Shown here: positions 19,655-64,000 of the stretch, in pieces | How positions within the stretch are numbered: position 1 is the stretch's first letter | Layout of the letters: every line of letters starts with the position of its first letter | IMG/VR virus record: IMGVR_UViG_3300005537_000001 | Location: 248,001 to 312,000 of that record | Strand: one strand, 5' to 3' | Length of the DNA stretch: 64,000 bases | Program-made: the position numbers and the translations under genes | Notes under the pieces: model-generated | Databases searched by the model: none | What the model saw: only the letters and a program-made list of their open reading frames with translations | Told to the model about the DNA's origin: nothing

Positions 19655-19693
19655 TCAAGTGATCAGCAATGATCACCTCATATAGGGATCAAC

Positions 19694-25245: not shown

Positions 25246-25550
25246 TTATTATCAGCTGCCTTGTTGCATATTATCTAATAGGCACCGCTACCGCCGCTTG
25301 GTTGTCCAAGACATATCCAAGCATAGATCATCAAGATCCAGCGTTAAAGCATGTTATGATACCGCTCTTTTGGCCACTTGTTGCGCTTATGTTTATCATG
25401 CGAATAATTTGTAAAATTCACATGATGATCTACACGGTAATGTCCCACGCGCTAAGCGTTTTCAACATGCGCATTACCAAAGATGGTAGCGATACCGTCA
25501 TTCGCTTTCACGTACCAAAGAAGGCAGAACTAAGTGCTAAAGATAACTGA
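25242..25550 (+). CDS. membrane hypothetical protein
   Basis: Two hydrophobic segments; ATGA overlap. Confidence 0.6.
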   Translation: MIIISCLVAYYLIGTATAAWLSKTYPSIDHQDPALKHVMIPLFWPLVALMFIMRIICKIHMMIYTVMSHALSVFNMRITKDGSDTVIRFHVPKKAELSAKDN

Positions 25551-45706: not shown

Positions 45707-45733
45707 AAGCGGACCCTCACGGGTCCGCTTTTG
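45707..45733 (+). terminator. intrinsic terminator ending the replication operon
   Basis: AAGCGGACCC-TCAC-GGGTCCGCTT followed by T residues. Confidence 0.85.
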
Positions 45734-45752: not shown

Positions 45753-45760
45753 CATAAATA
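45753..45760 (+). promoter_or_regulatory. late promoter variant CATAAATA
   Basis: Directly after the terminator. Confidence 0.55.
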
Positions 45761-45772
45761 TCTCATGACAAT

Positions 45773-46597
45773 ATGCACGGACATCTCATGAACACGACCA
45801 CTGATAAGTGGTGCGTATACATTACGCGTCATAGAACAGGAAAATTCTATGGCGGTAAAGGTGTGACCGAAGCCGTGCAAAATGGAACCTATAAGGGTTC
45901 TGGAGTAATGCTTCACAAATATTTCAAAAAATATCCAGCAACTGAGTGGATATCAGAAATTTTATCAACTCATGACATTGAAAATGATGCTTATGCAGCT
46001 GAAGCAAATTTTGTAACAGAAGAAATGCTGTTAAATCCAGACTGTTTAAATCTTATACCAGGTGGACATGGATGGACATCCGAGCAAGTGATAAAGCACA
46101 ATATTGAGATGTGGAAGAATCCATTATTTGTAGATAAAATGAGAAAGATGAAAGCAGCTCATTGGTTAGATCCACAATTTGTAGAGCGCATTACAAAAGC
46201 GGCATCCGAATTTCAAACTAAGCGTTGGCAAGATCCAGAATACCGCAAATTTATGACAGAGGTGTCAAATCGCACTGTTAACAGAACCTGGAGAAATCCA
46301 GAATTTCAAGCAGAAATGAGTAGACGAGCTTGGGCAAAACCAGAAGTGAGGGAATTTCAGAGGCGTAAGACAACTGAGCGTTGGGTATCTGGTCCACTCC
46401 GCGAACAACAAAGAATAGGCGCTCAAAAGGTATGGGAAGATCCTGTTAAGAGTGCACAAATGCGAGTTCAACGTTCAAATAGAATGAAAAATATTCGATG
46501 GATGAATAAAGATGGAGTTGCTCGACAAATACCGATTAATTTGATTGCACAGTTCGAAGCTGATGGATGGAATGGGGGAATGAAATGCAAATCCTAA
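45773..46597 (+). mobile_element. free-standing GIY-YIG (Seg-like) homing endonuclease
   Basis: CVYIT...KFYGGK...YKGSG...AYAAE N-domain followed by W..PE.R helical repeats; appears AT-richer than its flanks. Confidence 0.8.
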
Positions 46598-49500
46598 AAT
46601 CAATAGTATTGACAGAAGGCATCGATCATATTGAAGATTTGCCACCTCAGCAATTCATTCGCACAATAGAAGCTCTGAAAGATAAAATTATAACTGAAAA
46701 ACTGGATGGAACTGCACTTCGGTTTGGAATCGATGATGCTGGATTCTTTACATCTAGAGAAGGTAAATCCCCCAAGCGTGGTCGGTTCTACAGCGTTGAT
46801 GATTATCCATCAACAGCCAATTCTAACTCATTCCGCGCGGCCCACGTAGCCTTGGAAAAGGTCGAGCCGATAATTAGAAAGTATCTAAAATCCGGAGATA
46901 CGGTTGAAATTGAAGTACTGTTTGGTCGTCAGCCCAACACCGTAACCTACGGTCACGATGGAAAAAATTTCATCGTTCTTCTGCGCGGAGTGAATGGCAC
47001 ACCAGATGAGCGAGTTAGCAACTTAGCAGGCGCGCTCAAGGATAAGATTGTTTCGGCAGAGTCCGAAGTAATTTCATCACCAGATGGTGATAAGCTTGAA
47101 GCTAAAAGTGAAAAATCTAATTGGCAGTTCACAAACGTAGCTCCAATTCAAGCTGAAAAGATAAACACAAAGCAGGCGCTAGAGATGCTTGCAGAATTGA
47201 AAGCCTACATGGCCCAAAAGAATGAAGCATTTCCGGATAAGACAAATGCTGAAGTAGCTGAACTTGTTCTTACCGGTGTTCCAAAGGAGCAGCGTGGGTC
47301 GGCAAAAGCTGAGCGCGAAAAGGTAAACGCGCACATCATGGATAAATTCAAGAATCCGATCAAGGAGCTGCTGCTCAATCACTTTGTGCGAAAGATAAAA
47401 CCGTTCCTTCAGGATAAGAAGCTTGGTAAGGGTGAGGACATCGGCGTTGAGGGTGTAGTTGTTCGCGACCCAGTTACCGGCAGTCAAACGAAGATCGTTG
47501 ACAAGGATGTGTTTACCGCGATCAACACTTTCAACTCCGCTGTTCGCAACAACATTTCGGGACTTGTAAGAACGACTGATGAGAAGGCGCCAATCGAGAT
47601 GCGAGGTGGTGCTTTTGGTCAAGCGAAGATAAAAATCGCTGAATTATTGGGAGCGCATGAGCTGGCTCTATCATCAGCCATGAAGCGCTATATTTCTCAA
47701 TACAAAGGTTCTGATGAGGCAGCTACAGCCCTTAACGTTGCTAAACATCTCAGCATTACCAGCTTACCGGCTGTCCGCACCAAAATTTCCGGCATTCTAA
47801 CGGGTGTCGTGAAGGAGGTCAACACTATTCTTCAGGGATTCAAGAAGGAAGCTGGTGAGTTTAAGCTTCAACTTAAAACCGGTAAAGAAATTGGTATCAG
47901 CTCGGAGATCATGAAGCGAACGCTTACCGCCTTTGCTGAAACAAAGAAAGAAATAGCTGAAGTAAATTCTAACGTTCTGCATAGTCGCACGGCAGCAGAC
48001 CTCATAATGGCGCTGTATGGCAAGACGATAAGTCAGATCTTCAGTGAAGGAGAATCAAAGGTGAAGGAAGAATTTGAATTAATCCGTTCTGCAGATGCGA
48101 TAAATGAAGCCGACAGCGTAAAGCGCGAAGCATTTAAAAAGGTTAAGGAGCTTCAAGATAAAAATCCTGAGGCTCGAGTTTCCTGGAATGTAGTAAAGGG
48201 TGTAGCGACGGTATATCTTGGAACCAAAAAGGTTTGGTCAAAACCACTAGCTGAAGCTGGTGGGGTTGGTGCTAGTGCCGCAGGCGGCATGGGTTCAGGT
48301 AATGGAGCTATGGCTGCAGGTGGTGCCATAGGCGGATCTGGCTATGGTGGTGCGTTTAGCGGTGGGCACGGTAGCACAGGTCCAGGATTTTCTGGTGGAC
48401 GTGGTGGTAGCTTAGGTGGAAAATCTTCTGGAGGTAAGGAGGCGCGTATGTCTGATCCTTCAAAATATCTCAAGGAGCCTTCCGAAAAAGAACCTAACGC
48501 AAATCCATTTAAGATGCTCAAGGGTAACAAAATGGTAACCAAAAAAATTCGTAATTTCGTACGGCCGCTTAAATTTCCAATAGTCCAAAAGGAACCAACT
48601 GAAAGAAAGAAGCGCGTCGGCGAGGATGCTGGGGCTGCGACAACTTCAGCTGGAGCTATCGGAAATTTCCAGATGCCTGTTGGCGCGATAGGACCGGGTT
48701 TTGCTGGCACCGGATCAAAAGCTAAATTGCTAAGTAGGATTCCAGTGACTAAAAACAAGAAAAAATATTCTCTAATTTCTGCGGTTAACGAAGATGGATT
48801 CGCCCATCTTTCTGACATGAAATTTGCGGCCAATGTTGATGTTCCAGCTGGAAATGAAGTTGAATTCAATCAAGCTAGAAATCAATCACCTATCGACAAA
48901 ATAACTCCCATGACCGTAGATCGATATCTTAACCGCGCGCATGAAATAAACGACGCGGTTGATACGGTAACGTTTGGCATGGAGGCAGATGATGGATCGG
49001 TAACTAAAATCTACGTCAATGCATCTCAAGCTGATGGTTTTGAAAAGGCTCTGGCCGACATGTTGGGAAGAGAAACAGATCTTGAGCAAGTTGTAAACAA
49101 TCTTGCCAATCGCTTTGACATCGTTGATGTCGAGTGGCCTGATACGCTGAAACAGCAAGTTCAACAGCAACCTTCCGTTCCGCAATCTGATGAAACTCCA
49201 GCTGGTCCAGTAGATACATCTACCGAGCAGCCTACCGCAGACGGCGATGATTCCAACATAAACCTCGACCTTGAGCCAGAACATGCAGATGATGCAGATA
49301 CAGCTGGTGATGGAGAAATCAACCAAGAATTGACTCTTGACGAACCAGAAGAAGATGATGAAGATGATGAAATTGACGATGACGACAGCGATGAGGATGA
49401 GGAGGAACTAAAAGCACCTGATGATGAGCTAGATGATAATGGGGATACTGAGTCGAGCAGCGATGAAGATTCCGATAATGAAGATGAGGACAATGATGAA

Positions 49501-50277
49501 GATGAAACCACCGATGATGAGGGGTTAGAGCGTGATGATTTTGGTCAGCTAGTCGATAAATCCAAGAAGAAAAAGAAGAAGAAAAAAGAAGAAACCACTG
49601 AGGAATCGGTAAAGCTTCAAGAGGCGGTATCATTCGCTAATCCAGCCGCTCAGGCGATAGCTGATATGTTAATCGCGATGGGCTTCGACATTAGCGCAAG
49701 TCGAGCATACTCATATCAAGCTAACCAGCTGATAGACAAAAATTCCCCTGGGCTGCTTGTCGCTCGGTCAACATCTGTAGCAAGCAAGCTTGGCGGTGCC
49801 GCATCAACCTTAGCCGCGGCGCTCAAAGTATCTGGTGGCGGTGCATCAACTCCGGCTAAAACAACGACTACTACGCAAACGGCGACCGCCGCGCCTGCGA
49901 CACCAAAATCAACGCCTACGTTTGCAAATCCGGCGATTCAAATTATCGCAAACATATTGTCGGCGATTGGTTATGATTTAAATTCGACGCACTCATTTAC
50001 CGTTCAAATGAAATCGCTCATCGGTCATAATTCCCCAGGTTTGATCGCGGCTAAGCAGCAAAGCGTGCTGTCAAAGATAAAGGGAGCGCGGGACGCTCTT
50101 GCCGCCGGGCTAAAATCCAGTCCAGGTGCTTCTCCTGGATCAGCTTCAGCTGGATCTCTCGGTGGACCAGATTCTGACGCAGGAAGTGGGAGCGGTTCAC
50201 CGTTAGCAATTACGAACCTATCATCAGGATATTCATTGATCGGTTCCATCATCGCTGAAACAAGTGTAAAAATTTAG
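46585..50277 (+). CDS. large multidomain protein with N-terminal RNA-ligase-like nucleotidyltransferase (DUF6267-like)
   Basis: GIDHIEDL...TEKLDG, EIEVLF, EGVVVRD, KIVDK; Gly-rich linker, D/E tract and two C-terminal repeats; track start is 46567. Confidence 0.8.
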   Translation: MQILKSIVLTEGIDHIEDLPPQQFIRTIEALKDKIITEKLDGTALRFGIDDAGFFTSREGKSPKRGRFYSVDDYPSTANSNSFRAAHVALEKVEPIIRKYLKSGDTVEIEVLFGRQPNTVTYGHDGKNFIVLLRGVNGTPDERVSNLAGALKDKIVSAESEVISSPDGDKLEAKSEKSNWQFTNVAPIQAEKINTKQALEMLAELKAYMAQKNEAFPDKTNAEVAELVLTGVPKEQRGSAKAEREKVNAHIMDKFKNPIKELLLNHFVRKIKPFLQDKKLGKGEDIGVEGVVVRDPVTGSQTKIVDKDVFTAINTFNSAVRNNISGLVRTTDEKAPIEMRGGAFGQAKIKIAELLGAHELALSSAMKRYISQYKGSDEAATALNVAKHLSITSLPAVRTKISGILTGVVKEVNTILQGFKKEAGEFKLQLKTGKEIGISSEIMKRTLTAFAETKKEIAEVNSNVLHSRTAADLIMALYGKTISQIFSEGESKVKEEFELIRSADAINEADSVKREAFKKVKELQDKNPEARVSWNVVKGVATVYLGTKKVWSKPLAEAGGVGASAAGGMGSGNGAMAAGGAIGGSGYGGAFSGGHGSTGPGFSGGRGGSLGGKSSGGKEARMSDPSKYLKEPSEKEPNANPFKMLKGNKMVTKKIRNFVRPLKFPIVQKEPTERKKRVGEDAGAATTSAGAIGNFQMPVGAIGPGFAGTGSKAKLLSRIPVTKNKKKYSLISAVNEDGFAHLSDMKFAANVDVPAGNEVEFNQARNQSPIDKITPMTVDRYLNRAHEINDAVDTVTFGMEADDGSVTKIYVNASQADGFEKALADMLGRETDLEQVVNNLANRFDIVDVEWPDTLKQQVQQQPSVPQSDETPAGPVDTSTEQPTADGDDSNINLDLEPEHADDADTAGDGEINQELTLDEPEEDDEDDEIDDDDSDEDEEELKAPDDELDDNGDTESSSDEDSDNEDEDNDEDETTDDEGLERDDFGQLVDKSKKKKKKKKEETTEESVKLQEAVSFANPAAQAIADMLIAMGFDISASRAYSYQANQLIDKNSPGLLVARSTSVASKLGGAASTLAAALKVSGGGASTPAKTTTTTQTATAAPATPKSTPTFANPAIQIIANILSAIGYDLNSTHSFTVQMKSLIGHNSPGLIAAKQQSVLSKIKGARDALAAGLKSSPGASPGSASAGSLGGPDSDAGSGSGSPLAITNLSSGYSLIGSIIAETSVKI
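49627..50117 (+). repeat. two ~68-aa protein-level repeats
   Basis: FANPAAQAIAD...NSPGL...SKL...LAAALK versus FANPAIQIIAN...NSPGL...SKI...LAAGLK. Confidence 0.85.
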
Positions 50278-50301: not shown

Positions 50302-50961
50302 ATGAAGTTTGCCTACCCAGAGTTATCATCACGCAATGAATTAGGAATGAGGGTATATGATACCCCTTCAGGCTGGCTGCCATCAGTAACAACGATATTG
50401 GGAACAACGATGCCGGAAGAGAAGGCCGCTTCGTTGGAGAAGTGGAGAACCTCCCTAGGCAGAGAGAAGGCAGATAAGGTAACGCGTGATGCCGCGAATA
50501 ATGGCACACAAGTTCACAAGCTCATAGAGCGTTTTTTGAAGGGTGAAGAACTATTCCGCGAAGGTGAAGCATTTGAACCGTTAGAAATCTCGGGGTTCAA
50601 CGCGCTCAAGCTTAAGCTGAAGAAAATTGATGAGCTGTGGGGATTGGAAATTGCTTTATACTCTGACCTACTTGCGGTAGCTGGACGGTGCGACTGCGTC
50701 GGAATTTACAAAGGTAAACCGAGCATCATCGACTTCAAAACGTCGATGCGGCTTAAGGGTGAAAAGCAGATAGAGGATTACAAGCTTCAAATATGCGCGT
50801 ACTCCATCATGCACAATGAGATGTTTGGTACTGAAATTACAGATGGTGTAATCTTGATGACATCAGCTGGAGGTTTTCCACAAGAGTTTATCGTGGATTT
50901 AACCAAATATGTTGATCCACTGATCGCTCGAATAGATGAATTCTATCAACGACTTTCATGA
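50302..50961 (+). CDS. PD-(D/E)XK RecB/Cas4-like exonuclease
   Basis: PSVTTIL, GTQVH, GRCDC, IIDFKTS, LQICAY. Confidence 0.9.
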   Translation: MKFAYPELSSRNELGMRVYDTPSGWLPSVTTILGTTMPEEKAASLEKWRTSLGREKADKVTRDAANNGTQVHKLIERFLKGEELFREGEAFEPLEISGFNALKLKLKKIDELWGLEIALYSDLLAVAGRCDCVGIYKGKPSIIDFKTSMRLKGEKQIEDYKLQICAYSIMHNEMFGTEITDGVILMTSAGGFPQEFIVDLTKYVDPLIARIDEFYQRLS

Positions 50962-50971
50962 GGTGATCCAC

Positions 50972-52144
50972 GTGAACAAACTACTGACCTACCTCGCCTC
51001 CTTCGTCCTAGCAATTGGCATCGCCGCTTGCTCGCCAACAAATCAACCTCCAGCTCATATCACCCAAACTATCATCCAAGGCGGTTTGCCCGATTTTACG
51101 CCGATAGTAGATGAGGTGATGCCAGCCGTTGTTACGGTGTTTGTTACGGTTCCAGCTAAAGCTTCCCCTGGATTAGATAATCTAATACCATTTTTCTTTC
51201 AGATCGTTCCCAACGATTCTAAGCCGATAGTTCCCAAGGAACCACAGCTACCAAAAACCGTAACGATGCAAGGTTCTGGATTCGTCATAACTACCGATGG
51301 TTACATCATTACAAATAATCACGTAGTTGATGAAGCTACAAAAATTGCAGTTAGATTTTCAGATAATCGTGAGTATGCCGCCAGAATAATTGGTACCGAT
51401 GAACGATCTGACATCGCTCTGCTAAAGATTGACGGCAAGAATTTTCCGACAGTTAGAATTGGACACTCATCTGCTGTGAAGGTTGGGCAGTGGGTTCTAG
51501 CCATGGGGGCACCGTATGGTTTTGAAGGCACGGTTACAGCCGGAATAGTTAGCGCTAACAATCGATACATGCGCTCCGGTGAGCTTGAACCGTACATTCA
51601 AGTAGACGCGGCCGTTAACCATGGAAATTCCGGCGGAGTTCTAGTTAACATGGCTGGTGAAGTTATCGGCATCAATTCTCAAATTTGGAGCAACAGTGGA
51701 GATTTTAACGGCCTTGCATTTGCTATTCCAATCGATTATGCGATAGATGTTGAAAAGCAGCTGCTTGCTACTGGTCACGTAGTTAGGGGTAGAATCGGTG
51801 TCGTTATACAGTTTGTAGATCAAAAGGAAGCAGATGCTGGTGGGCTGGACAGACCTCGTGGAGCCAAGCTAGCTAGCATTGAAGGTGGCGGACCAGGAGC
51901 TGCGGCCGGGTTGAAGAAAGATGATATCGTGTTGTCGGTTAACAACTCTCCCATTGAAATTCATTCTCAGATGCCGCTGCTTATAAGTAATTTGAAGCCT
52001 GGTTCTGTAGCCGTCCTAAGCGTGTGGCGAAATAAGCGGGCTATCACGGTTAAGGTAAAAGTTGACGAAATGCAAACTACGCTAGCCCAAGATAACAAAG
52101 ACCTTAGGTCGCTTCCAGCTCCAAAGGATGATGAAAAGAAATGA
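50972..52144 (+). CDS. HtrA/DegQ-family serine protease, lipoprotein with one PDZ domain
   Basis: TNNHVV, SDIALL and GNSGG triad; SD GAGGTG before GTG 50972; lipobox IAAC. Confidence 0.93.
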   Translation: MNKLLTYLASFVLAIGIAACSPTNQPPAHITQTIIQGGLPDFTPIVDEVMPAVVTVFVTVPAKASPGLDNLIPFFFQIVPNDSKPIVPKEPQLPKTVTMQGSGFVITTDGYIITNNHVVDEATKIAVRFSDNREYAARIIGTDERSDIALLKIDGKNFPTVRIGHSSAVKVGQWVLAMGAPYGFEGTVTAGIVSANNRYMRSGELEPYIQVDAAVNHGNSGGVLVNMAGEVIGINSQIWSNSGDFNGLAFAIPIDYAIDVEKQLLATGHVVRGRIGVVIQFVDQKEADAGGLDRPRGAKLASIEGGGPGAAAGLKKDDIVLSVNNSPIEIHSQMPLLISNLKPGSVAVLSVWRNKRAITVKVKVDEMQTTLAQDNKDLRSLPAPKDDEKK

Positions 52145-54465: not shown

Positions 54466-54941
54466 AGCCATTTCCAAAGCTGGATGTGATGAAAAAGAAT
54501 GATGTGCTGGTTAGGTTGGAGCTCCGAAAGTACCATTGGCAGCTCGTAAAGGGCTACATGCACGACGCGAGCAAGCAGATACTTCTCGTCGGCGATCGGC
54601 CGGGTCCAAGCGCGCCGAAGGAACCGTATTACCATCACACTCCTTTCTATTCAACTAAGCATTGTTCTGGTTGGTTGAATCTACTTCTTGAACAAGAAAA
54701 GATACCGGAAAAGAAGCTGGTGTGGATTAACAGCGCTGATGAAAACGGTGAGTACTATCCAATCGCCTTAGCAACAGCGATGAAGCCGAAAAAGATTATC
54801 GCGCTAGGTGGTAAGGCAGCAGCTTGGCTTAGAAAGAACGACGTTAACGACTTTATCGCGGCTCCACACCCACAATATTGGAAACGATTTCACAACAAAG
54901 AAGCTTATCCGCTTATAGAGATTCTTCACAATCTCACGTAA
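54462..54941 (+). CDS. uracil-DNA glycosylase-superfamily protein
   Basis: LLVGDRPG...PF...SG.WL; IIALG..A; PHP. Confidence 0.7.
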   Translation: MKPFPKLDVMKKNDVLVRLELRKYHWQLVKGYMHDASKQILLVGDRPGPSAPKEPYYHHTPFYSTKHCSGWLNLLLEQEKIPEKKLVWINSADENGEYYPIALATAMKPKKIIALGGKAAAWLRKNDVNDFIAAPHPQYWKRFHNKEAYPLIEILHNLT

Positions 54942-56565
54942 CTCTACTTCTCCAGTAAGCTACACCACCCAAATCCCTTCCTGCCGCGGCGTTACCGACC
55001 CCGTCGTGGTGAACCAAGCCGTATTGAAAATCACCCTGGTTTAGGTTGGGAAATTGACTAGACCACGCCGTCGAGACGATTGATTTTCCAGCTATCTTAG
55101 TGCTATCAGCTTGGTATGCCGTCCAAAACGGCAAAATTTCCGTTTTGTAAAATGCGATATACGCTCTGGTCGCTAGCGTAGAATCACAGCGGTTCGCGCA
55201 AGTTGGTGGCACACCGATTATCCCATAATAGTGAACAGCCGTTGCGTCCAGCATCTGATATAAGCCAGTTGCTGAGCTAGTTGGATTTTTCGCGAATGGA
55301 TCTAAACTGCTTTCTATAGTGGCGACGGATTGTATAAATTTTGCATCGAATGGTGTCAAGGTAACATCTGACGCGCACGCCGACTGTATAGCGCTAATAA
55401 CTTCAGCTGCATCTGGAGTAATTGCAGGCGCGCACGCTGATCTGTGAGAATTTATGTTGTTGGTCGGAGGCGTTGGTGGATTTCCATCAGGCTGAACTGG
55501 AACAGCCGTATCTTGCGGTAGTACCGGCGGACAATCAGCATTAGCTGCAGCTGTCTCTCCTGTTGTCAATCCAGCGTTAGAATTTGTTATGTTCTCAAAT
55601 CCAGTTGGAGCTGGATCACCATCAACTGTAGCAGCTGGGTCATTGTCAATCGCGACTGAAGTTGTGCCATTCAAATATGCCATAGGATCAACAGGATTTC
55701 GCCATGATCCTTTGTGAACTTCAAAGTGAAGATGCATGCCGGTTCCAATGCCAGCGTTTCCTTCAAGAGCTATTTTTTGTCCAGCTGATACTAGCTGACC
55801 AACGGTAACATATATGTTACCATCATTCATGTGGCCATAAATTGTAGTTGCTACAAGGTTCTCTTGTGAGTCGCGATGCTCGATGACTATCCAATTACCA
55901 AAACCTATCGCTGGACCAGCCTTGGTTACAACACCATCACCTGCTGCCACTATAAACCCCTGAGAATGATCAACCATCGCGATGTCAATGCCGTTGTGCT
56001 GGGTGCTGGCTCCAGGAGCTGGAGGTGTTCTTGGACCAAACGCGCAGGTAACGTGAGCTTCGGAGCTTGTTGTCCCGACAAGGGGGAAAACAAGCTGGAC
56101 AGTATCGGATTTTGTTCCAATCTTTGGGTAGAAATTAAATTCGCGCGAATCGATGAACCCGCTGCCGTCATTGACCTCGATGAGAACTTTGTAAAGCTTA
56201 TTAGCATTCGCGCCGGAGACCGTTCCACTTAGCAATCCAGTTAGCGTATTGAATGATAGTTCCGTAAGCGGTGATAATCCTGAGCTGCCGTTGACCGCTA
56301 TCTGCCAACCTGTTGCTGTTCGCGTGGAGCTTGGCGTAAGCTTGAAGGTAACATTGACGTTCCCGTTAAGATCAGACGTAAGTGAGGTGTTGTTGATGAG
56401 GTTTGGAGTTGTACCACCGATATCATTCTTCAGCCCCGAAACCGAGCCTGCTCTCCGCATGTAACAATCCAGATTTTCGCCAACTTGAATTTGCGTTGGC
56501 TGACGATATTCTGGTATCGGGGCCCACAGCGGTGTTCTATCGGGAGGGGTGCAGCTGCAACTCAT
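54934..56565 (-). CDS. Ig-like + M23 peptidase + SLT transglycosylase muralytic protein
   Basis: HNGID, YGHM and HLHFE (M23); TIESS.DP.A...SATGLYQ (SLT). Confidence 0.85.
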   Translation of the reverse strand: MSCSCTPPDRTPLWAPIPEYRQPTQIQVGENLDCYMRRAGSVSGLKNDIGGTTPNLINNTSLTSDLNGNVNVTFKLTPSSTRTATGWQIAVNGSSGLSPLTELSFNTLTGLLSGTVSGANANKLYKVLIEVNDGSGFIDSREFNFYPKIGTKSDTVQLVFPLVGTTSSEAHVTCAFGPRTPPAPGASTQHNGIDIAMVDHSQGFIVAAGDGVVTKAGPAIGFGNWIVIEHRDSQENLVATTIYGHMNDGNIYVTVGQLVSAGQKIALEGNAGIGTGMHLHFEVHKGSWRNPVDPMAYLNGTTSVAIDNDPAATVDGDPAPTGFENITNSNAGLTTGETAAANADCPPVLPQDTAVPVQPDGNPPTPPTNNINSHRSACAPAITPDAAEVISAIQSACASDVTLTPFDAKFIQSVATIESSLDPFAKNPTSSATGLYQMLDATAVHYYGIIGVPPTCANRCDSTLATRAYIAFYKTEILPFWTAYQADSTKIAGKSIVSTAWSSQFPNLNQGDFQYGLVHHDGVGNAAAGRDLGGVAYWRSRVT

Positions 56566-57494: not shown

Positions 57495-60400
57495 TTAGCC
57501 ATGAGCGGCTGGTGTAATACCAGGTACACCCTCGATGACAACGAATATGTTGATCGCTGAAGTTAGCGTAACGATAAGGTTGTTTGCATCGACGAACAAT
57601 ACCTGCTGTGGAAGCAGCATGCTTGGACCAACGTAGATCGTACCAAGAGCACCGCCGGTTGTTACCGCGGATGTTACCGTTATCACGGTGTTACCTCCGG
57701 TAAATACCGAGCTTGATACCGTCCACGTACCATCATTGCTCGTAGAGCCAACTACCGCAAATTGGAAACCATTCACGAAGATTGCCGTTTGATCGCTACC
57801 CGCGATGGTGAACGATGTGGTAGAGGTTGTATTGACAGCAAAGCTGGCAGGTACCGTTGAATCATAGCACACGACAGATACACATTCCTGGTTGAGGTTG
57901 TGGTTAATCTTGTATGCCTTCTTAGCACCAGCATCTGCAGCTGAACTGTACGTAAACTGAACTGGAGAAGCTGTAAAGACTCCGGTAGCAGAAGCAACTA
58001 GAACAGTTCCAACGACAGCGGCTGAGTTGTTGACGCCAGTGCCACCAGATGTTGAGCCTAGAATTCCAGCTAGAGTCACGGCGCCCGTAGTAGATGCGCT
58101 TGGTGTCAATCCGGATAGTGATGTCTGGAATGATGTAACGCCGGTGTTGTTGACTGTTACAGCTCCAGTGCCACCAGAGATCGATATGCCAGTTCCAGCA
58201 ACGATGGATGTAACACCGGTGTTTGCAAGTTGGATTGAACCAGCACCGTTCGTTACTGAGATACCAGCTCCGGTAGTTGTAATGTTGGCTGCAACTGGAA
58301 CATTTCCAGTAGAACCAATCAGCAGCTGACCGTTGGTTGGCGCTGAAGTGGTTACCAGGTTGTTGCCTGCATCGGAGTATACGAATGACTTAGCGGTGTT
58401 GGTATCAACCTTAAGCGTTGTTGTTACCTCAACAGAACCAGGAGCGATGAACGCTGAAGGAACGCTGAGAGTTACGCTGCCAGTTGAAGCTGAGGCTGTA
58501 ATTTCATTGGCCGTACCAGCTAGCGATGTAACGCCGGTATTCGCAAGGGTGATTGAACCAGCACCGTTCGTTACCGAGATACCAGAACCGGAGGTCACGA
58601 TGTTGGCAACAACTGGGTTGGCACCAGTAGAACCGATCAACAGCTGACCGTTGGTTGGTGATGCTGATGCGACAACGTTGCTGTTAGCGTCAGAGAACAA
58701 GAAGGCGCTTGCCGTATTTGTATCAATCTTCAACGTTGTCGTTACTTCTACAGAACCAGGCGCGATGAACGCGGTTGGAATTGCGATCGTTACGCCAGCT
58801 GGAGATGATACCGCCGTTGTTGTAATTTCATTCGGTGTACCGAAGATGTTGAATGATGATCCAACAACCAATGGAACCGTACCAGAGCCATCGGTATCGA
58901 TCGGCGTGGAATTAGTTAGGAATGTTGGGGCACCAGTTCCACCGGATAGAACTATCTGACCGGTAGTACCAGCGGTTGAAACCGCTAGGGCTGTTCCTGT
59001 ACCATAAACTAGTCCACCAGCCGTAGCCGTCAAGCTTGCATTAGTACCACCGCTTGCAAGACCGAGGGTGCCAGCTAGCGTTATGGCGCCAGTTGTTGCG
59101 GTCGATGGTGTAAGACCGGCAAGGCTTGTCTGGAAAGATGTAACGGCTGTCGTTGATGCATTTGCCCACGACGGTGCGCCACCGGTGTTACCGACAAGGA
59201 TCTGACCAGTTGTACCGGCCGCGGTTACCTGCAGCGCTCCGGTTCCGTTACCGTAAACAACGCCGTCAGAGGTAAATGAGGTTGCACCTGTACCACCGTT
59301 GGAAACTACCAGCGTGCCGCCGAGAGTTACGTTACCCGCCATGGTGCTTGAAGGAGTCAAACCGGTTGTTCCACCGTTGAACGATAGAACGCCAGTGTTG
59401 CTGATTGAAGTGTTACCGTTGTTGTAGGTAACTGAAATGCCAATACCATTTACAACGACTGGGTCGATTGAGTACCACTGGGTAGTGGTTGATGCTTGAC
59501 CAGTCCAGGTACCACCAGCTGGTACGCTTATTGAATTGTTAGCACCAGCACCGTCGATGGCAGCTCCACTTGCAGGGAATACCAATACTCCCATCGAGCC
59601 AACGTTAACTACGGTAACTTCAGCACCAGCAAACGCTGGAACTGGAAGTAATACAGCAGTATTGCCCGGTGTTGCGGTTACAACGCAGAATTCATGTCCT
59701 AGCGGAGCCGCGGCACCTTGAGTTGTGCCGTTCGCCGTTATCATGCCCGTGCTCTGATAGGTCAAACCGTCAAATTTCGCGGTTGTCGTAACTTCCAATG
59801 AACCTGGTAGAACAACCGTCGACGGTAAGCTTAGAGTTACAGAACCAACCGAGCTGCTTGCCGCGATTTCATTTGCGGTACCAGCGATGCTCGTTACCGC
59901 GAGCGTGTTGAGAGCGACGAATGTTGGATCAGCTCCGGTATTACCAGTAAGAACGGTACCAGTTGCACCTACCGCCGTAGCGACAATTGAGCTTGTACCC
60001 TCACCAAGTAGAACACCGTGAGTCGTTAGCGTTGTAGCTCCGGTACCACCATTGCCAACCGCTAGGGTGCCAGTGACGGCATTTGCGTTTGCAAGATTTA
60101 CAGCGCTCCACGTAGCTGTTGTGCCATGTGTTCCAGATGATGTTAGCACTTGACCAGCTGTCGCTGAAGAATCTACGGCAACGTTGTTTAGACCATCGAT
60201 GTATGTTGTTACACCATCGGTGCGAACGCTTATGACGTTACCAGCCGTATTCAAACCGCTCGTAAACGTAAAGACCGATCCACCAGAGAACTGGGAGAAT
60301 AGAATGCTAGTTGTACCAATTGTTATTGGGTCTTGTGTAGACTGCACCCAACCAGTTGTTGCCTGAGTTGTACCATCCGTGATGAATACCGCTGCTGCAT

Positions 60401-63400
60401 CCATTTCAGCTGGAGTGTTGTTGTCGGTAGCGCGAGTCAATACCCAATTAGTTGAGCCAGATCCGGTATTTGTAACGGTGTATATACCATTCCACACACC
60501 GCTTGAATTGGTTATGTTGGATTCGTTCTTTACGAGAACTCGCTGACCAGTTGATAGCGTGATTCCATCAAGTACGAGCGCTGCCTGAGTTCCGGCATTT
60601 GTCAGCGTAGCACCGACTCCAGAAGCACCGTTGTTATACGTTGGCGCTGTTCCAGTTAGAGTAAAGAAGTTTTCCGTGGTTCCCGCGGTTACGGCGGTTT
60701 TCCATGATAGACCATTATTTGCGGCGTCAACGTATGCCTTTGTGGCAGCATCAGTTGGGCTTGTAACTGTTCCATGCAGCGTCACACCTGAAAATGATCC
60801 AGTGCCAACGAACGATGCACCGTTGGCAACGAACATGCCAGAACCATCACCTTCGAGAATTTGATTAGTTGTTAGCGTTGATGATACAGACTGCCACGTT
60901 GGAGCACCGGTACCACCAGAGATTAGCGCTTGACCAGCTGTACCAGCTGTACCGATAGCTAGGGCAGAAGCTGTGCTGTAGACTGGAGCACCAGCTACTG
61001 GTGTGAGGTTGGCATTTGTGCCACCATTTGTTAGACCAAGAAGACCGGTTACAGCTGCAGATTGAGCTAGATTTACGGCACCAAACGCTGGTGTTCCACC
61101 GGAACCAGCCTGTAGCACCTGAAATTGAGTACCAGCCGCGGTTACACCGACGGTGCCAGTACCATTACCGAATAGAATGCCATCCGTCGTTAGCGTTGTA
61201 GCTCCAGTACCGCCAGATGCAACGCCTAGGGTGCCAGATAGAACAACGGCACCAGTTACAGGTGAAGCTGTTATACCAGCGAGCGTTGTAGCAAACGACG
61301 TTACGCCGGTGTTAGAGATGATCGTTTCACCTGGTGAATACGTTACCGACAAACCGGTTCCGCTCATTACGATAACTGGATCAATCGTGTACCAGTTACC
61401 AGAGTTAACGGACTGATACGTTGCAGTTCCACCCGTTGGAATCAAAACGGCGGCACCAGTTGCACCACCGTCGATTTGGTCACCACCAGCTGGGAATACA
61501 GCTAGCGTATGAGCGCCCAAGTTAACTACGGAAATTTCAAGACCGACACCAGATGCAGGAAGTACTACGCTGTCATTCGCGGTAGCTACGGTAGTAACTA
61601 CGTTATATGAGTGAGTAAGAGGTGTGGCACCGCTCTGACCACCACCCGCAAATGCCGTGATGCCAGTTGTAGCGCTTTCAAACGTTAGACCATTTACCGT
61701 CAAGTTGCCGGTAGAAGTTACCGAGCCTGGAGCGACAAGAGTTGAGGACAAGCTTAGCGTTACCGTACCAGTTGCAGAAGATGCATTGATCTGATTAGCA
61801 GTACCGAGGATTGAGTTAGCAACGTTGGACCATGTTGGAAGGGCACCAGCTCCTGCCGATGTTAGCACCTGTCCACTAGTGCCAGCTGAACCGTTAAGGC
61901 CAAGCGCACCAGAAACTAGATTTACTCCAGTTCCGGCGCTGATGCCATTGATCGTAAGCGCCGTGCCTGAAGCTGGGGTGTTGATTGTAACGTCACCAGC
62001 AGCTGAAATTGTCATTCTTGTTGACAGTGATGTCGCGCCGGTTTGGAATTGGATTGTACCACCAGAACCATCAGAACCACCAACGCCGGCTTCAAGATTT
62101 AGACCACCACCGTTACCACCAGAACCTGTCGCGTTACCACCCTGAAGCGTTAGCACACCACCAGTTTGAGTTCCACCAGTACCAGTTGCAGCTCCACCAG
62201 CTACCGTAACGGCACCACCTACAGAAGCGGTACCAGTTGCAGCTCCACCAGCTACCGTAACGGCACCACCGTTACCAGTTCCACCAGCCGCGCCGGCGGT
62301 AAGATTTACAACGCCGCCAGCCGTATTGTTTGCGGTGCTACCAGCACCGGCAGTTAGAGTAAGCGCGCGACCTGGATTGGTGTCGGTGCTTGGACCAGAT
62401 TTAACCGTCAGCGCGATGTTGGAACCCATCACGATGTTGCCGCCGAGTGAAGTGTTACCAAACGCTAGCGTTTCGGTTGTGTCGGTCCACGTAAAATCGG
62501 ATGTACCGGTTAGAACGCCACCAGCGCTTCCATAGCCGATAAACGTTGCGGTTAGTGGAGCAGCTGGAGCAGCCCATGTTGGAGGAGAAGTTGATGATCC
62601 TCCAGATGTTAGAACTTGACCGGCGGTACCGAAGGATGGTGTTGAACCAATGCCAAGGGCGCCAGAATCATTAATGGTGAACTGCGTTGAAACTGAAACA
62701 TCACCAGTTTGCAAAATAATTGATCCACCGGTACCAGATGGTGATGTGCCACCCATCAAAATAACTGCACCACCCGGGCCGCTCGTCATACCAGGACCAC
62801 CGGATATCGTTACAGCTTCACCCCGCGCTGGTCCAGCTCCCGCGTGACCACCCGCAATTATTACCCCGCCACCTAGGCTGCCGCTTGATGTTATACCACC
62901 GGTGATAAAAACTCTACCACCTGCAACACCACTGACACCACCACCACCACCATTGATAACCACATCACCAGAAGTTTGACCGATACCAGACGCCTGTCCA
63001 CCTTGAACGGTGACTTGACCGCCAACAGATGTTGACGATGTTCCGCCGGAAATAATTACAATGCCGCCTCGACCAGATCCAGTGTTTGCGCTACCAGTGA
63101 CGTTAAGATTTGGAGATGTTGCTCCAGTTGTTCCTGGGATGGTAAGTATGCCATCTACGGTTGATGAACCAATGCTTAAAGTTTTAGTCGTTTCAGTCCA
63201 GGTAAAATCTGGAGTGCTCGTAACCGTGTTTGTCGCGCTGCCGTACGCTACCTGGGTAGCGGTAAGCGTAGTTGCCGTGGTCGTCCACGTAGGTGGTCCA
63301 CCCGCGCCAGCTGACGTTAGCGTCTGACCAGCCGTACCAACTGAGTTACCAGTACCAACGCCAAGCGCGCCTGATGGGTTAATCGTTAAAGCTAGAGCCG

Positions 63401-64000
63401 CGGCGGTTGTACCAGTTGTGACTGTGAATGAACCAGATGTACCAGTTGCAGAGATACCGGTAGCTAGACTTACGCTACCACCACCACCCGCGCTTGACGC
63501 ACCACCAGCTTGAACTATGAACGATGATCCAGCACCACCTGAAGTTGTAGCAGGAGTAGAGGCACCGGTAAACGTTATGTTGCCACCATGCGCGTTAGCT
63601 CCAGCACCAGGCGTGCCGATTGAAACTAGAAATGCACCTGATGGTTGGTTTGTTGCTCCACCAGCACCAGTCGTTAGGGTTAAATTGTTGCCAGATACCG
63701 TGGACGCGGTGCCGACGCCAGCTTGAATCTGCAGAGTGCCACCACCACCGGATGGACCAGATAGCGTACCGGTTCCGTTGGATGCACCGATGCTTAGAGT
63801 TGCTGTAGATTCACTCCACGTAAAGTCGGAAGTGCCGGTAAGAAGGTTACCAGCTGAACCATAACCAACGAACGTTGACGCTAGGGTTGCGCCAGTCGAA
63901 TTTACAGTTACGGCACCAGTCGCTCCGGACACTGAAATATTGGTACCAGCAACGATGGATGTTACGCCGGTATTGTTGATTTGAAGTGTACCAGCTCCAG
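57495..64000 (-). CDS. giant fibre protein (>2,160 aa), 5'-truncated by the window edge
   Basis: Frame stays open past 63932 to the edge (GAGTLQINNTGVTS...); shares modules with 10671, 15401 and 21132. Confidence 0.88.
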   Translation of the reverse strand, partial: GAGTLQINNTGVTSIVAGTNISVSGATGAVTVNSTGATLASTFVGYGSAGNLLTGTSDFTWSESTATLSIGASNGTGTLSGPSGGGGTLQIQAGVGTASTVSGNNLTLTTGAGGATNQPSGAFLVSIGTPGAGANAHGGNITFTGASTPATTSGGAGSSFIVQAGGASSAGGGGSVSLATGISATGTSGSFTVTTGTTAAALALTINPSGALGVGTGNSVGTAGQTLTSAGAGGPPTWTTTATTLTATQVAYGSATNTVTSTPDFTWTETTKTLSIGSSTVDGILTIPGTTGATSPNLNVTGSANTGSGRGGIVIISGGTSSTSVGGQVTVQGGQASGIGQTSGDVVINGGGGGVSGVAGGRVFITGGITSSGSLGGGVIIAGGHAGAGPARGEAVTISGGPGMTSGPGGAVILMGGTSPSGTGGSIILQTGDVSVSTQFTINDSGALGIGSTPSFGTAGQVLTSGGSSTSPPTWAAPAAPLTATFIGYGSAGGVLTGTSDFTWTDTTETLAFGNTSLGGNIVMGSNIALTVKSGPSTDTNPGRALTLTAGAGSTANNTAGGVVNLTAGAAGGTGNGGAVTVAGGAATGTASVGGAVTVAGGAATGTGGTQTGGVLTLQGGNATGSGGNGGGLNLEAGVGGSDGSGGTIQFQTGATSLSTRMTISAAGDVTINTPASGTALTINGISAGTGVNLVSGALGLNGSAGTSGQVLTSAGAGALPTWSNVANSILGTANQINASSATGTVTLSLSSTLVAPGSVTSTGNLTVNGLTFESATTGITAFAGGGQSGATPLTHSYNVVTTVATANDSVVLPASGVGLEISVVNLGAHTLAVFPAGGDQIDGGATGAAVLIPTGGTATYQSVNSGNWYTIDPVIVMSGTGLSVTYSPGETIISNTGVTSFATTLAGITASPVTGAVVLSGTLGVASGGTGATTLTTDGILFGNGTGTVGVTAAGTQFQVLQAGSGGTPAFGAVNLAQSAAVTGLLGLTNGGTNANLTPVAGAPVYSTASALAIGTAGTAGQALISGGTGAPTWQSVSSTLTTNQILEGDGSGMFVANGASFVGTGSFSGVTLHGTVTSPTDAATKAYVDAANNGLSWKTAVTAGTTENFFTLTGTAPTYNNGASGVGATLTNAGTQAALVLDGITLSTGQRVLVKNESNITNSSGVWNGIYTVTNTGSGSTNWVLTRATDNNTPAEMDAAAVFITDGTTQATTGWVQSTQDPITIGTTSILFSQFSGGSVFTFTSGLNTAGNVISVRTDGVTTYIDGLNNVAVDSSATAGQVLTSSGTHGTTATWSAVNLANANAVTGTLAVGNGGTGATTLTTHGVLLGEGTSSIVATAVGATGTVLTGNTGADPTFVALNTLAVTSIAGTANEIAASSSVGSVTLSLPSTVVLPGSLEVTTTAKFDGLTYQSTGMITANGTTQGAAAPLGHEFCVVTATPGNTAVLLPVPAFAGAEVTVVNVGSMGVLVFPASGAAIDGAGANNSISVPAGGTWTGQASTTTQWYSIDPVVVNGIGISVTYNNGNTSISNTGVLSFNGGTTGLTPSSTMAGNVTLGGTLVVSNGGTGATSFTSDGVVYGNGTGALQVTAAGTTGQILVGNTGGAPSWANASTTAVTSFQTSLAGLTPSTATTGAITLAGTLGLASGGTNASLTATAGGLVYGTGTALAVSTAGTTGQIVLSGGTGAPTFLTNSTPIDTDGSGTVPLVVGSSFNIFGTPNEITTTAVSSPAGVTIAIPTAFIAPGSVEVTTTLKIDTNTASAFLFSDANSNVVASASPTNGQLLIGSTGANPVVANIVTSGSGISVTNGAGSITLANTGVTSLAGTANEITASASTGSVTLSVPSAFIAPGSVEVTTTLKVDTNTAKSFVYSDAGNNLVTTSAPTNGQLLIGSTGNVPVAANITTTGAGISVTNGAGSIQLANTGVTSIVAGTGISISGGTGAVTVNNTGVTSFQTSLSGLTPSASTTGAVTLAGILGSTSGGTGVNNSAAVVGTVLVASATGVFTASPVQFTYSSAADAGAKKAYKINHNLNQECVSVVCYDSTVPASFAVNTTSTTSFTIAGSDQTAIFVNGFQFAVVGSTSNDGTWTVSSSVFTGGNTVITVTSAVTTGGALGTIYVGPSMLLPQQVLFVDANNLIVTLTSAINIFVVIEGVPGITPAAHG
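62179..62270. repeat. 41-bp direct repeat, period 51, inside the fibre gene
   Basis: GTACCAGTTGCAGCTCCACCAGCTACCGTAACGGCACCACC at 62179 and 62230. Confidence 0.9.

What the first reader, a model, noticed from the sequence alone, without database searches (positions are those of the whole stretch)
46585..50277. Candidate head-packaged polyprotein carrying an RNA-ligase-fold enzyme
Seen: an N-terminal nucleotidyltransferase with ligase motifs I (KLDG), III, IV (EGVVV) and V (KIVDK), then a helical domain, a Gly-rich linker, a basic segment, a globular domain, a long D/E tract and two tandem ~68-aa repeats. Hydrophobic-x-E|small motifs sit near module boundaries: VLTE|G, AINE|A, PLAE|A, RVGE|D, AVNE|D, KLQE|A, IIAE|T. 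Known: T4 prohead protease gp21 cleaves after (L/I)-x-E in internal head proteins. Inference: this late gene encodes a polyprotein processed in the head, delivering a third ligase (RNA/tRNA repair or nick sealing) and other effectors with the DNA before transcription begins. The late ORF 19694-20095 has similar motifs.
Basis: partly seen in the sequence, partly recalled or inferred. Interest (0 to 1): 0.75.

Follow-up and report, generated by a model that had tools for sequence, protein, structure and literature searches.

The report
Head-packaged polyprotein with RNA-ligase enzyme
A 1230-residue late gene of a 368-kb jumbo phage encodes a chain of modules, led by an RNA-ligase-fold enzyme and separated by copies of a T4-like capsid-targeting and cleavage motif, so it is probably cut up in the phage head; cleavage itself has not been shown.

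Summary
Window 46585-50277 (+) is one 1230-aa ORF with the modules described.

- **Enzyme fold.** An AlphaFold2 model of aa 1-505 (pLDDT 93.6) is an Rnl2/REL1/Rnl5-type adenylyltransferase domain plus a helical domain. K39, E110, E289 and K303 are each kept in 116-121 of 128 relatives.
- **Short motif alone is chance.** The query has 18 [LIV]-x-E motifs against 17.9 expected.
- **Comparative data rescue the idea.**
  - A longer motif, (F/Y)-S-L-I-K-S-x-x-E, recurs at the same module boundaries in about 65 homologues.
  - Where the modules are separate genes, the same motif is the N-terminal leader of the downstream gene.
  - The leader (aa 1-10) and the boundary (aa 494-505) are modelled as disordered.
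  - The genome encodes a gp21-type prohead protease, and its gp23-type capsid protein has a conserved h-x-E|TA junction. The target copies that junction at aa 677-696.
  - A T4-type late promoter precedes the gene in relatives.
  - The Ralstonia phage RsoM2USA orthologue (ORF438) is a published abundant virion protein.
  - Other abundant RsoM2USA virion proteins start MKTFKQFL..E, close to T4's capsid targeting sequence.

Not shown: cleavage, ejection into the host, ligase activity and substrate.

Verdict: a new variant of the T4 internal-protein system.

The parts
45709..45732 (+). Intrinsic-terminator-like hairpin (8-bp GC stem, T run) that ends the upstream small ORF
   Evidence: Read directly from the sequence. 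The same terminator-then-promoter layout is seen in many related loci.
45753..45760 (+). CATAAATA, a one-mismatch variant of the T4 late promoter TATAAATA. It sits 12 nt before the homing-endonuclease ATG and probably drives the endonuclease gene plus the target gene.
   Evidence: Exact TATAAATA precedes the homologous gene in 20 of 59 distinct loci (background 0.10 per kb), and the CATAAATA variant occurs in several others. The four exact sites in the window all lie just upstream of + strand ORFs.
45773..46597 (+). Homing-endonuclease gene inserted between the promoter and the target gene. It overlaps the target's start by 13 nt.
   Evidence: phrog_314, E 7e-22. It is absent at this position in most relatives, for example L017/L028.
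46585..50277 (+). The 1230-aa modular ORF (P0002), stop codon included
   Evidence: About 70 full-length homologues of 850-1540 aa come from independent metagenomes.
46585..46617 (+). N-terminal leader, aa 1-11 (MQILKSIVLTE|G): a candidate capsid-targeting and cleavage propeptide
   Evidence: Disordered in the model (pLDDT 34). A leader ending h-x-E directly before the conserved G-I-x-H-I-E-D-L is present in 64 of 64 long homologues.
46618..47529 (+). Adenylyltransferase (RNA-ligase NTase) domain, aa 12-315, with motifs I (K39), Ia (T56/R58), III (E110), IIIa (Y122), IV (E289-G290) and V (K303, K307)
   Evidence: AF2 pLDDT 93.6. VIA-align: REL1 Z 9.3, Rnl5 Z 9.1, T4 Rnl2 Z 8.2. Foldseek top hits are all RNA ligases. 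PF09414 hits 8 of 10 relatives. Residue conservation.
47530..48063 (+). All-helical C-terminal domain of the ligase module, aa 316-493
   Evidence: long helices. It matches only generic three-helix bundles.
48061..48108 (+). Boundary sites VKE| (aa 493-495) and motif copy A, FELIRSADAINE| (aa 497-508)
   Evidence: Disordered in the model. V-K-E-S and (F/Y)SLIKSIxE|D are conserved in homologues, with extra cassettes inserted between them in some. The strict motif is present in 53 of 62 homologues against 1.8% in null windows.
48109..48444 (+). Lineage-specific 49-aa insert ending PLAE| (aa 509-557), then the Gly-rich tract (aa 558-620)
   Evidence: Almost no homologue has residues aligned to this stretch (occupancy 0.02-0.26). 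Other homologues carry different small cassettes here.
48445..48624 (+). Basic segment, aa 621-680, ending RVGE|
   Evidence: Conserved 38-aa K/R-rich peptide module in 64 homologues. Fragment pI 10.3.
48613..48672 (+). Copy of the major capsid protein maturation junction, aa 677-696 (RVGE|DAGAATTSAGAIGNFQ)
   Evidence: 13 of 17 residues identical to the MCP's E|TAAAGTSSAGAIGNFQ. It holds the only 8-mer or longer shared with any other protein of the genome, and the DNA differs at synonymous sites (23 of 27 nt). An HMM of the MCP N-terminal arm gives E 5.6e-4, the second-best hit after the MCP itself.
48754..48792 (+). Motif copy B, KKYSLISAVNE| (aa 724-736), directly before the globular domain
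   Evidence: In split orthologues this motif is the N-terminal leader of the downstream gene.
48793..49179 (+). Conserved small alpha/beta domain, aa 737-865 (confident core 771-861), function unknown
   Evidence: Up to 68% column identity. pLDDT 73-93. No informative fold, Pfam, PHROG or Atlas match.
49180..49590 (+). Disordered D/E tract (aa 866-990) and Lys run (aa 991-1002)
   Evidence: Present in the homologues with variable length and sequence.
49612..49623 (+). KLQE| site (aa 1010-1013) before the repeats
   Evidence: Some homologues have a full motif copy here, such as ELKKLLKSLGE|A.
49630..50127 (+). Two tandem helical repeats of about 70 aa (aa 1016-1085 and 1112-1181) joined by a Thr/Ala/Pro linker
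   Evidence: 49% identity over 70 aa, E 6e-22. Repeat 1 is modelled as a helical hairpin with pLDDT 73-91.
50224..50259 (+). C-terminal motif copy YSLIGSIIAE| (aa 1214-1225), followed by a 5-residue tail
   Evidence: Shared only with the two closest homologues (SFSLLGSIIAE|TKD).

Best explanation
The gene is a late-expressed, capsid-targeted modular precursor.

**Proposed mechanism.** Each module is preceded by a copy of a roughly 10-residue amphipathic motif ending in hydrophobic-x-Glu: leader MQILKSIVLTE, then FELIRSADAINE, YSLISAVNE and YSLIGSIIAE. This motif is the local equivalent of T4's capsid targeting sequence plus gp21 cleavage site. The precursor would be built into the prohead core. 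The phage's gp21-type (S77) prohead protease would then cut after the Glu residues, as it cuts the capsid protein at its conserved h-x-E|TA junction.

**Predicted products inside the head:**
- A roughly 53-kDa RNA-ligase-fold enzyme (aa 12-495).
- Basic peptides.
- An acidic alpha/beta domain with its D/E tail (aa 737-1013).
- A pair of helical repeats.

**What is shown:** the fold and catalytic residues; the conserved, position-specific motifs; the split-gene equivalence; the late promoter; the protease and capsid-junction copy in the genome; and virion presence of the RsoM2USA orthologue (from the literature).

**What is inferred:** that cleavage happens, that the fragments leave with the DNA, and that the ligase then seals broken RNA or nicked nucleic acid in the newly infected cell, possibly as a pre-adenylylated single-turnover enzyme.
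For: **Fold**
- AF2 model pLDDT 93.6, pTM 0.90.
- Best structural matches are RNA ligases: REL1 Z 9.3, Naegleria Rnl5 Z 9.1, T4 Rnl2 Z 8.2, T4 Rnl1 Z 7.8. Foldseek hits agree.
- PF09414 hits 8 of 10 distant members, one of them above the gathering score.
- K39 is kept in 121, E110 in 118, E289 in 116 and K303 in 121 of 128 sequences.

**Processing and targeting**
- S77 protease at G000 353256-353912.
- gp23-type MCP with a conserved h-x-E|TA junction in 12 phages.
- Target aa 677-696 copies that junction.
- Leader h-x-E in 64 of 64 long homologues. The strict motif is in 53 of 62 and 33 of 37 boundary windows against 1.8% in null windows.
- The boundaries are the disordered parts of the model.
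- Extra cassettes sit between motif copies in some homologues.
- In RsoM2USA and the roughly 770-aa subfamily the downstream module is a separate gene beginning MTKFLQSLLE / MSLLKDIAE.

**Late expression**
- Exact TATAAATA lies upstream in 20 of 59 loci, against a background of 0.10 per kb.

**Virion presence**
- RsoM2USA ORF438 is one of about 10 abundant virion bands (PMC8504454).
- ORF89, ORF132 and ORF438 of that phage start MKTFKQFLSE, MKTFKQFLNTLME and MLTFKQYAQPILTE. T4's L/I-x-E rule and 10-residue CTS are described in PMC9026906.
- 34 genes of the window's own genome carry such leaders, against 6 expected.
Against: - No cleavage has been observed for this protein or any homologue.
- [LIV]-x-E is not enriched in the query itself.
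- The PA5oct homologue (gp228) is not flagged among that phage's 93 MS-detected virion proteins, although its neighbours are.
- The gene lies beside primase, helicase and nuclease genes in every relative examined. That would also fit a replication or repair role.
- The profile of the conserved basic linker module does not retrieve the MCP (E 6). The capsid-junction copy is therefore solid only in this genome.
- The 51.69 kDa quoted for RsoM2USA ORF438 (62.4 kDa predicted full length, 54.0 kDa if processed) may not be a measured mass.
- Seven family members have lost the catalytic residues, so catalysis is not universally required.
Confidence: 0.6

Rival explanations
1. It is an internal head or core protein whose role is mainly structural: core assembly, DNA charge management through the basic and acidic modules, or lining the capsid. 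Under this reading the ligase fold is incidental or exapted, and there is no role as an injected effector.
For: - ORF438 is abundant enough to be a Coomassie-visible virion band.
- Seven lineages have lost K39, E110, E289 and K303 together yet keep the protein.
- The modules are strongly basic or strongly acidic.
- The capsid N-arm-like segment could dock on the shell.
Against: The catalytic residues are kept in 116-121 of 128 sequences over deep divergence, down to about 26% identity. That argues for selection on catalysis in most lineages.
Confidence: 0.2
2. It is a cytoplasmic replication or repair enzyme that is not packaged. The recurring motifs are linker helices or partner-binding peptides, and the virion detection in RsoM2USA is carry-over.
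For: - Conserved position next to DnaB, primase and nucleases from Atu_ph07 to PA5oct.
- PA5oct gp228 is not in the virion proteome.
Against: - A conserved late promoter precedes the gene.
- The protein is one of the abundant virion bands in RsoM2USA, and it shares its leader with other virion proteins there.
- The motif equals an N-terminal leader in split genes.
- The protein contains a copy of the capsid junction.
Confidence: 0.1
3. It is packaged but not cut into modules. Only the N-terminal leader, if anything, is removed, and the internal motif copies serve as repeated core-binding (targeting) elements rather than cleavage sites.
For: - In T4, targeting and processing determinants of the CTS are separable (PMC9026906).
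- There are no cleavage data.
Against: - Every motif copy ends in Glu followed by a small or acidic residue, as at the MCP junction.
- Split orthologues show that the modules work as separate chains.
- ORF438 is quoted at a lower mass than predicted.
Confidence: 0.1

Closest known systems
T4 internal head proteins IPI/IPII/IPIII and Alt (capsid targeting sequence plus gp21 processing)
   Same: - Short N-terminal leader ending L/I-x-E.
- A gp21-type S77 protease and a gp23-type capsid protein in the genome.
- Late expression.
- An enzyme cargo, as with Alt, and trimming at both ends, as with Alt (PMC9026906).
   Different: - Several cargo modules are strung in one 1230-aa precursor with the motif repeated internally.
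- The cargo is an RNA-ligase-fold enzyme.
- The motif is longer, (F/Y)SLIKSxxE.
- One site copies the capsid protein's own maturation junction.
Rnl2 / REL1 / Rnl5-type ATP-dependent RNA ligases (Pfam PF09414)
   Same: - Adenylyltransferase fold with motifs I, Ia, III, IIIa, IV and V.
- A helical C-terminal domain follows, as in T4 Rnl2 and Rnl1.
   Different: - Only 9-17% identity to solved ligases.
- A helical insertion of about 80 aa lies between motifs IIIa and IV.
- Motif V reads K-I-V-D-K rather than K-x-K.
- The query itself scores below Pfam's cut-off (14.5 against 27 bits).
- No activity data.
Processed ejection and inner-body proteins of phiKZ and SPN3US giant phages
   Same: Many head-internal proteins are cut after Glu by a diverged gp21 homologue, and enzymes are delivered with the DNA (PMC9026906; PMC5694885 and PMC10052503, listed).
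   Different: - A different phage lineage, with a T4-like gp23 capsid protein rather than the phiKZ type.
- A different motif.
- A multi-module precursor.
Ralstonia phage RsoM2USA ORF438 + ORF437 and PA5oct gp228
   Same: - Orthologues of the ligase module (38% and 29% identity).
- ORF437 is the orthologue of the globular domain.
- Same gene neighbourhood.
   Different: - In those phages the modules are separate genes.
- Both are annotated only as hypothetical. Their fold, leaders and link to head maturation were not described.

Membership tests
Covalent nucleotidyltransferase superfamily (ATP-dependent RNA/DNA ligases, capping enzymes) | Motif I K-x-D-G with the nucleophilic lysine | tested here: met
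   E-K39-L-D41-G42. K is kept in 121, D in 125 and G in 126 of 128.
Covalent nucleotidyltransferase superfamily (ATP-dependent RNA/DNA ligases, capping enzymes) | Motifs III, IIIa, IV and V in the right order and conserved | tested here: met
   E110 is kept in 118, Y122 in 120, E289 in 116, G290 in 122 and K303 in 121 of 128. K/R307 is kept in 111 of 128. Motif V spacing is atypical (K-x-x-x-K).
Covalent nucleotidyltransferase superfamily (ATP-dependent RNA/DNA ligases, capping enzymes) | Adenylyltransferase fold | tested here: met
   Model aa 10-313 aligns to REL1 (Z 9.3, 186 residues), Rnl5 (Z 9.1) and Rnl2 (Z 8.2). Foldseek pdb and BFVD top hits are RNA ligases.
Covalent nucleotidyltransferase superfamily (ATP-dependent RNA/DNA ligases, capping enzymes) | Formation of a covalent enzyme-AMP intermediate, and ligation | not testable with these tools
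   Needs a biochemical assay.
Pfam RNA_ligase PF09414 (Rnl2-like) | Score at or above the gathering cut-off (27 bits) | tested here: inconclusive
   The query scores 14.5 bits. Among 10 relatives, 8 hit, one above the cut-off (P0179, 28.8 bits) and one at 25.9 bits.
T4-type CTS-targeted, gp21-processed internal head proteins | N-terminal leader of about 10 residues ending L/I-x-E, outside the folded domain | tested here: met
   Residues 1-11 end in LTE. pLDDT is 34 for aa 1-10. Present in 64 of 64 long homologues.
T4-type CTS-targeted, gp21-processed internal head proteins | gp21-family prohead protease and a gp23-family capsid protein cut after h-x-E in the same genome | tested here: met
   PF03420 E 3e-24. 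PF07068 E 1e-94. The junction h-x-E|TA is conserved in 12 phages. Cleavage at that junction is inferred from T4.
T4-type CTS-targeted, gp21-processed internal head proteins | Late transcription | tested here: met
   TATAAATA lies upstream in 20 of 59 related loci. The variant CATAAATA is at 45753-45760 here. The promoter is predicted, not mapped.
T4-type CTS-targeted, gp21-processed internal head proteins | Presence in purified virions | tested here: inconclusive
   Positive for the RsoM2USA orthologue (PMC8504454). Not flagged for the PA5oct homologue. There are no data for this uncultured phage.
T4-type CTS-targeted, gp21-processed internal head proteins | Observed cleavage after the Glu, and ejection with the DNA | not testable with these tools
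   Needs proteomics and infection experiments.
Viral polyprotein (one ORF cut into several functional chains) | Independent modules separated by repeated protease sites | tested here: inconclusive
   Conserved motif copies sit at every boundary, and the modules exist as separate genes in relatives. Cleavage itself is unobserved.

The most novel reading that the evidence does not exclude
A large clade of T4-related jumbo phages loads its heads through 'cassette' polyproteins. A portable targeting-and-cleavage motif lets arbitrary cargo modules be inserted, fused or split. One cargo is a high-copy RNA-ligase-fold enzyme, packaged in pre-adenylylated form. It would act as a single-shot repair enzyme on RNA or nicked nucleic acid the moment the genome enters, before any phage gene is expressed. 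A segment that mimics the capsid protein's own maturation junction would govern its processing or its docking on the shell.
Probability: 0.25. Interest if true: 0.85.

Novelty: new variant of a known kind. Interest (0 to 1): 0.72.

Why it matters
- **Packaged enzymes.** Enzymes known to travel in phage heads are few: T4 Alt, P1 Dar proteins and the phiKZ virion RNA polymerase. My literature searches found no report of a packaged RNA ligase. It would point to RNA or nick repair as an immediate-early counter-defence, for example against anticodon nucleases or other RNA-cutting immunity.
- **Annotation tool.** The recurring motif gives a sequence-only way to predict head-internal proteins in uncultured jumbo phages. 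About 34 candidates appear in this genome alone.
- **Modular evolution.** The split and fused forms show how such cargo evolves in modules.
- **Existing data explained.** The analysis explains an unannotated abundant virion band in a cultured phage (RsoM2USA ORF438), so the whole hypothesis can be tested directly.

Tried and rejected
- **PHROGs** gave nothing for the target.
- **PDB sequence search** with the family profile gave only coiled-coil noise.
- **hhalign** of the family profile against the phage's own Rnl2-like protein aligned only motif I (probability 2.7%).
- **ESM Atlas** gave only hypothetical viral clusters, plus a DUF6267 lead that I did not confirm. It gave nothing for aa 737-870.
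- **Fold search of the C-terminal model** was uninformative (best Z 5.6, generic helices).
- **Linker-module HMM** did not retrieve the MCP from the proteome (E 6). I do not claim general homology between the linker module and the capsid N-arm. I claim only the 17-residue copy in this genome, plus weak, co-located hits in relatives.
- **The neighbouring HtrA-like trypsin/PDZ protease** (50936-52144) was considered as the processing enzyme. I set it aside because it has a lipoprotein-type signal and is probably periplasmic.
- **The simple xxE enrichment test** on the query alone is negative.
- **PA5oct paper:** no mention of gp228, and no supplements are held.
- **Tool limits:** The search for related loci with the 128-sequence alignment failed. 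One alignment was rejected because it held a GenBank-derived row, and I rebuilt it without that row.
- **Complex prediction** was not used. No binding claim depends on it.

Full report
**1. What is there**

The window is part of a complete 368,054-bp virus record with direct terminal repeats. The window corresponds to bases 248001-312000 of that record. One ORF runs to 50277 on the + strand. The start at 46585 has a GGGGGA ribosome-binding site and agrees with the homologues' N-termini. That gives 1230 aa (P0002).

- KLDG at aa 39-42, EGVVV at 289-293 and KIVDK at 303-307.
- A helical region, a Gly-rich tract and a basic segment.
- A conserved globular domain, a D/E tract and a Lys run.
- Two repeats that are 49% identical over 70 residues.

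Comparison with 70 full-length homologues defines the modules:
- aa 1-500 are highly conserved.
- aa 505-630 are specific to this lineage.
- aa 631-665 are the basic segment.
- aa 737-865 are conserved.
- An acidic tract follows, then the repeats.

**2. Context**

The neighbours are DNA polymerase B, a FEN-type exonuclease, primase, a DnaB helicase, a homing endonuclease inserted immediately upstream, a PD-(D/E)XK exonuclease and an HtrA-like protease. The position downstream of the helicase is conserved in RsoM2USA, PA5oct, Atu_ph07 and metagenomic relatives.

The genome also has Rnl1, two Rnl2-like genes, an ATP-dependent DNA ligase and a weaker ligase-like match. This is therefore not the 'third' ligase.

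**3. The N-terminal module is an RNA-ligase-fold enzyme**

- **Sequence.** Pfam gives only a sub-threshold RNA_ligase hit for the query. Eight of ten distant relatives hit the same family, one of them above the curated cut-off.
- **Family size.** An exhaustive search found 413 cluster representatives.
- **Conservation.** In an alignment of 128, the catalytic set is nearly invariant: K39, D41, G42, R58, E110, Y122, E289, G290 and K303.
- **Model.** The AlphaFold2 model is very confident (pLDDT 93.6, pTM 0.90).
- **Foldseek.** The top PDB hits are all RNA ligases: T4 Rnl1, archaeal Rnl3, Trl1, Naegleria Rnl5 and T4 Rnl2.
- **VIA-align.** Scores are REL1 Z 9.3, Rnl5 Z 9.1 and Rnl2 Z 8.2 over aa 10-313. 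The part from aa 305 to 472 is a generic helical bundle.
- **BFVD.** After the PA5oct homologue, the hits are mostly viral RNA ligases.
- **Exceptions.** Seven family members have lost the lysine together with the other catalytic residues.

**4. Is it a processed, head-targeted precursor?**

In the single sequence the short [LIV]-x-E motif is not enriched (18 observed, 17.9 expected). Seven independent lines support the idea.

(a) **Protease and capsid protein.** The genome encodes a gp21-family protease and a gp23-family capsid protein. In 12 related phages the capsid protein has a conserved h-x-E|TA junction at the position where T4 gp23 is cut.

(b) **Position-specific motif.** A longer motif, roughly (F/Y)-S-L-(I/L)-K-(S/T)-(I/V)-x-E followed by D/E/G, recurs in the otherwise hypervariable linkers of the homologues:
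- It follows the ligase module in 53 of 62 homologues.
- It precedes the globular domain in 33 of 37.
- It occurs in 1.8% of control windows.
- The N-terminal leader ends h-x-E directly before the fold in 64 of 64.
- The query has four good copies: the leader, aa 497-508, aa 724-736 and aa 1214-1225.

(c) **Disorder.** The leader (aa 1-10) and the first boundary (aa 494-505) are the only disordered parts of the model.

(d) **Split genes.** In RsoM2USA the second module is a separate gene that begins MTKFLQSLLE. In the roughly 770-aa subfamily the next gene begins MSLLKDIAE, MNLLKE or MKSLLKE, and often starts with an ATGA overlap. The internal motif of the fused forms is therefore the N-terminal leader of the split forms. 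Some homologues carry extra small domains between two motif copies.

(e) **Capsid junction copy.** Target aa 677-696 match the capsid protein's own junction in 13 of 17 residues.
- The match holds the only 8-mer or longer that the target shares with any other protein of the genome.
- The DNA differs at synonymous sites, so this is not a recent gene conversion.
- A profile of the capsid N-arm finds the target with E 5.6e-4, second only to the capsid protein itself.
- The converse profile of the conserved linker module does not find the capsid protein (E 6). I limit this claim to this genome.

(f) **Late expression.** Exact TATAAATA lies within about 100 nt upstream of the homologous gene in 20 of 59 distinct loci, against a background of 0.10 per kb. 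One-mismatch variants after terminators occur in many others. In this window a terminator (45709-45732) and CATAAATA (45753-45760) precede the inserted endonuclease gene. All four exact TATAAATA sites in the window sit just upstream of + strand ORFs.

(g) **Published experiment.** In Ralstonia phage RsoM2USA, ORF438 was identified by LC-MS/MS as one of about ten abundant bands of purified virions. ORF438 is the orthologue of the ligase module plus the basic tail (PMC8504454).
- It is listed at 51.69 kDa. The ORF predicts 62.4 kDa, and removal of the leader and basic tail predicts 54.0 kDa. Whether the published figure was measured is unclear.
- Three further abundant virion proteins of that phage begin MKTFKQFLSE, MKTFKQFLNTLME and MFDMLKGLINAPITE. 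ORF438 read from Met8 begins MLTFKQYAQPILTE.
- These resemble the T4 capsid targeting sequence. That sequence, its 10-residue size and the L/I-x-E rule are described in PMC9026906.

In the window's own genome, 34 genes carry such leaders at residues 3-9 against 6 expected. Several of them lie in the head module.

**5. Counter-evidence**

- The PA5oct homologue is not flagged as a virion protein, although its neighbours are.
- The conserved replication-gene neighbourhood would fit a cytoplasmic role.
- No cleavage, ejection or activity has been observed.
- Loss of the catalytic residues in seven lineages shows that the protein can persist without catalysis.

**6. The other modules**

- The domain at aa 737-865 is a confident small alpha/beta fold, and the first repeat is a helical hairpin.
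- Nothing informative matches either of them.
- The predicted fragments alternate between strongly basic and strongly acidic.

**7. Verdict**

- The ligase fold is close to certain.
- Head targeting and processing are well supported indirectly (about 0.6-0.7).
- Delivery into the host and a repair function there are inference (about 0.3-0.4).

The system works like T4's CTS/gp21 internal-protein pathway. It differs in three ways: it is a multi-module precursor with the motif repeated internally, it carries an RNA-ligase-fold cargo, and it contains a copy of the capsid maturation junction. My literature searches found no prior description. I rate it a new variant of a known kind.

Noticed in passing
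G000 whole genome (outside and inside the window), e.g. G000:C1:144543, 145927, 152564, 188357, 207418, 330962, 352539, 356635, 362293, 363805: About 34 predicted proteins begin with a T4-CTS-like leader (MKVNELLE, MKIYELLE, MLVRELLE, MRFTEFLIE and similar) against 6 expected from the internal rate. This is a candidate set of head-internal proteins for this phage.
   Followed up: partly
window 45773-46597 (+): A homing-endonuclease gene is inserted between the late promoter and the target gene. Three related loci (L030, L061, L068) have upstream sequence whose end resembles the end of this endonuclease gene, which would fit a recurrent homing site. I did not check those loci for the gene.
   Followed up: partly
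window 50936-52144 (+): A phage-encoded HtrA-like trypsin + PDZ protease with an N-terminal hydrophobic, lipobox-like signal (…AIGIAAC S…), probably periplasmic. Its positional counterpart in PA5oct (EST35_0241, downstream of the exonuclease gene; homology not checked) is annotated as a structural protein by MS.
   Followed up: partly
window 19647-20095 (+): Exact TATAAATA at 19647-19654 precedes ORF 19694-20095. The ORF begins MKLTEIKPVVSE|D, a leader of the same general type. It has no Pfam or PHROG match.
   Followed up: partly
window 25534-26712 and 27874-28947 (+): An Rnl1-type and an Rnl2-type RNA ligase gene lie close together. The Rnl1 protein shares the 7-mer VLTEGID with the target's leader-domain junction (aa 8-14 of P0002), possibly by chance.
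   Followed up: no
window 57495-63998 (-): A giant ORF of more than 2160 aa runs off the window end on the minus strand, next to an M23-peptidase protein (54934-56565, -). It may correspond to the very large structural proteins reported in RsoM2USA and CBB-like phages.
   Followed up: no
A1 members P0112, P0152, P0157, P0187, P0189, P0190, P0200: Seven family members (about 690-930 aa) have replaced the motif I lysine and most other catalytic residues together. They are apparent pseudo-enzymes retained in their phages.
   Followed up: partly
L049-L070 (~770-aa subfamily): A subfamily has a different C-terminal domain after the ligase module, with a hydrophobic stretch (…YLATVLMAVIIY…). The boundary motif is E-(G/A/S)-L-L-x-E, and the globular acidic domain is encoded by the next, overlapping gene.
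   Followed up: partly
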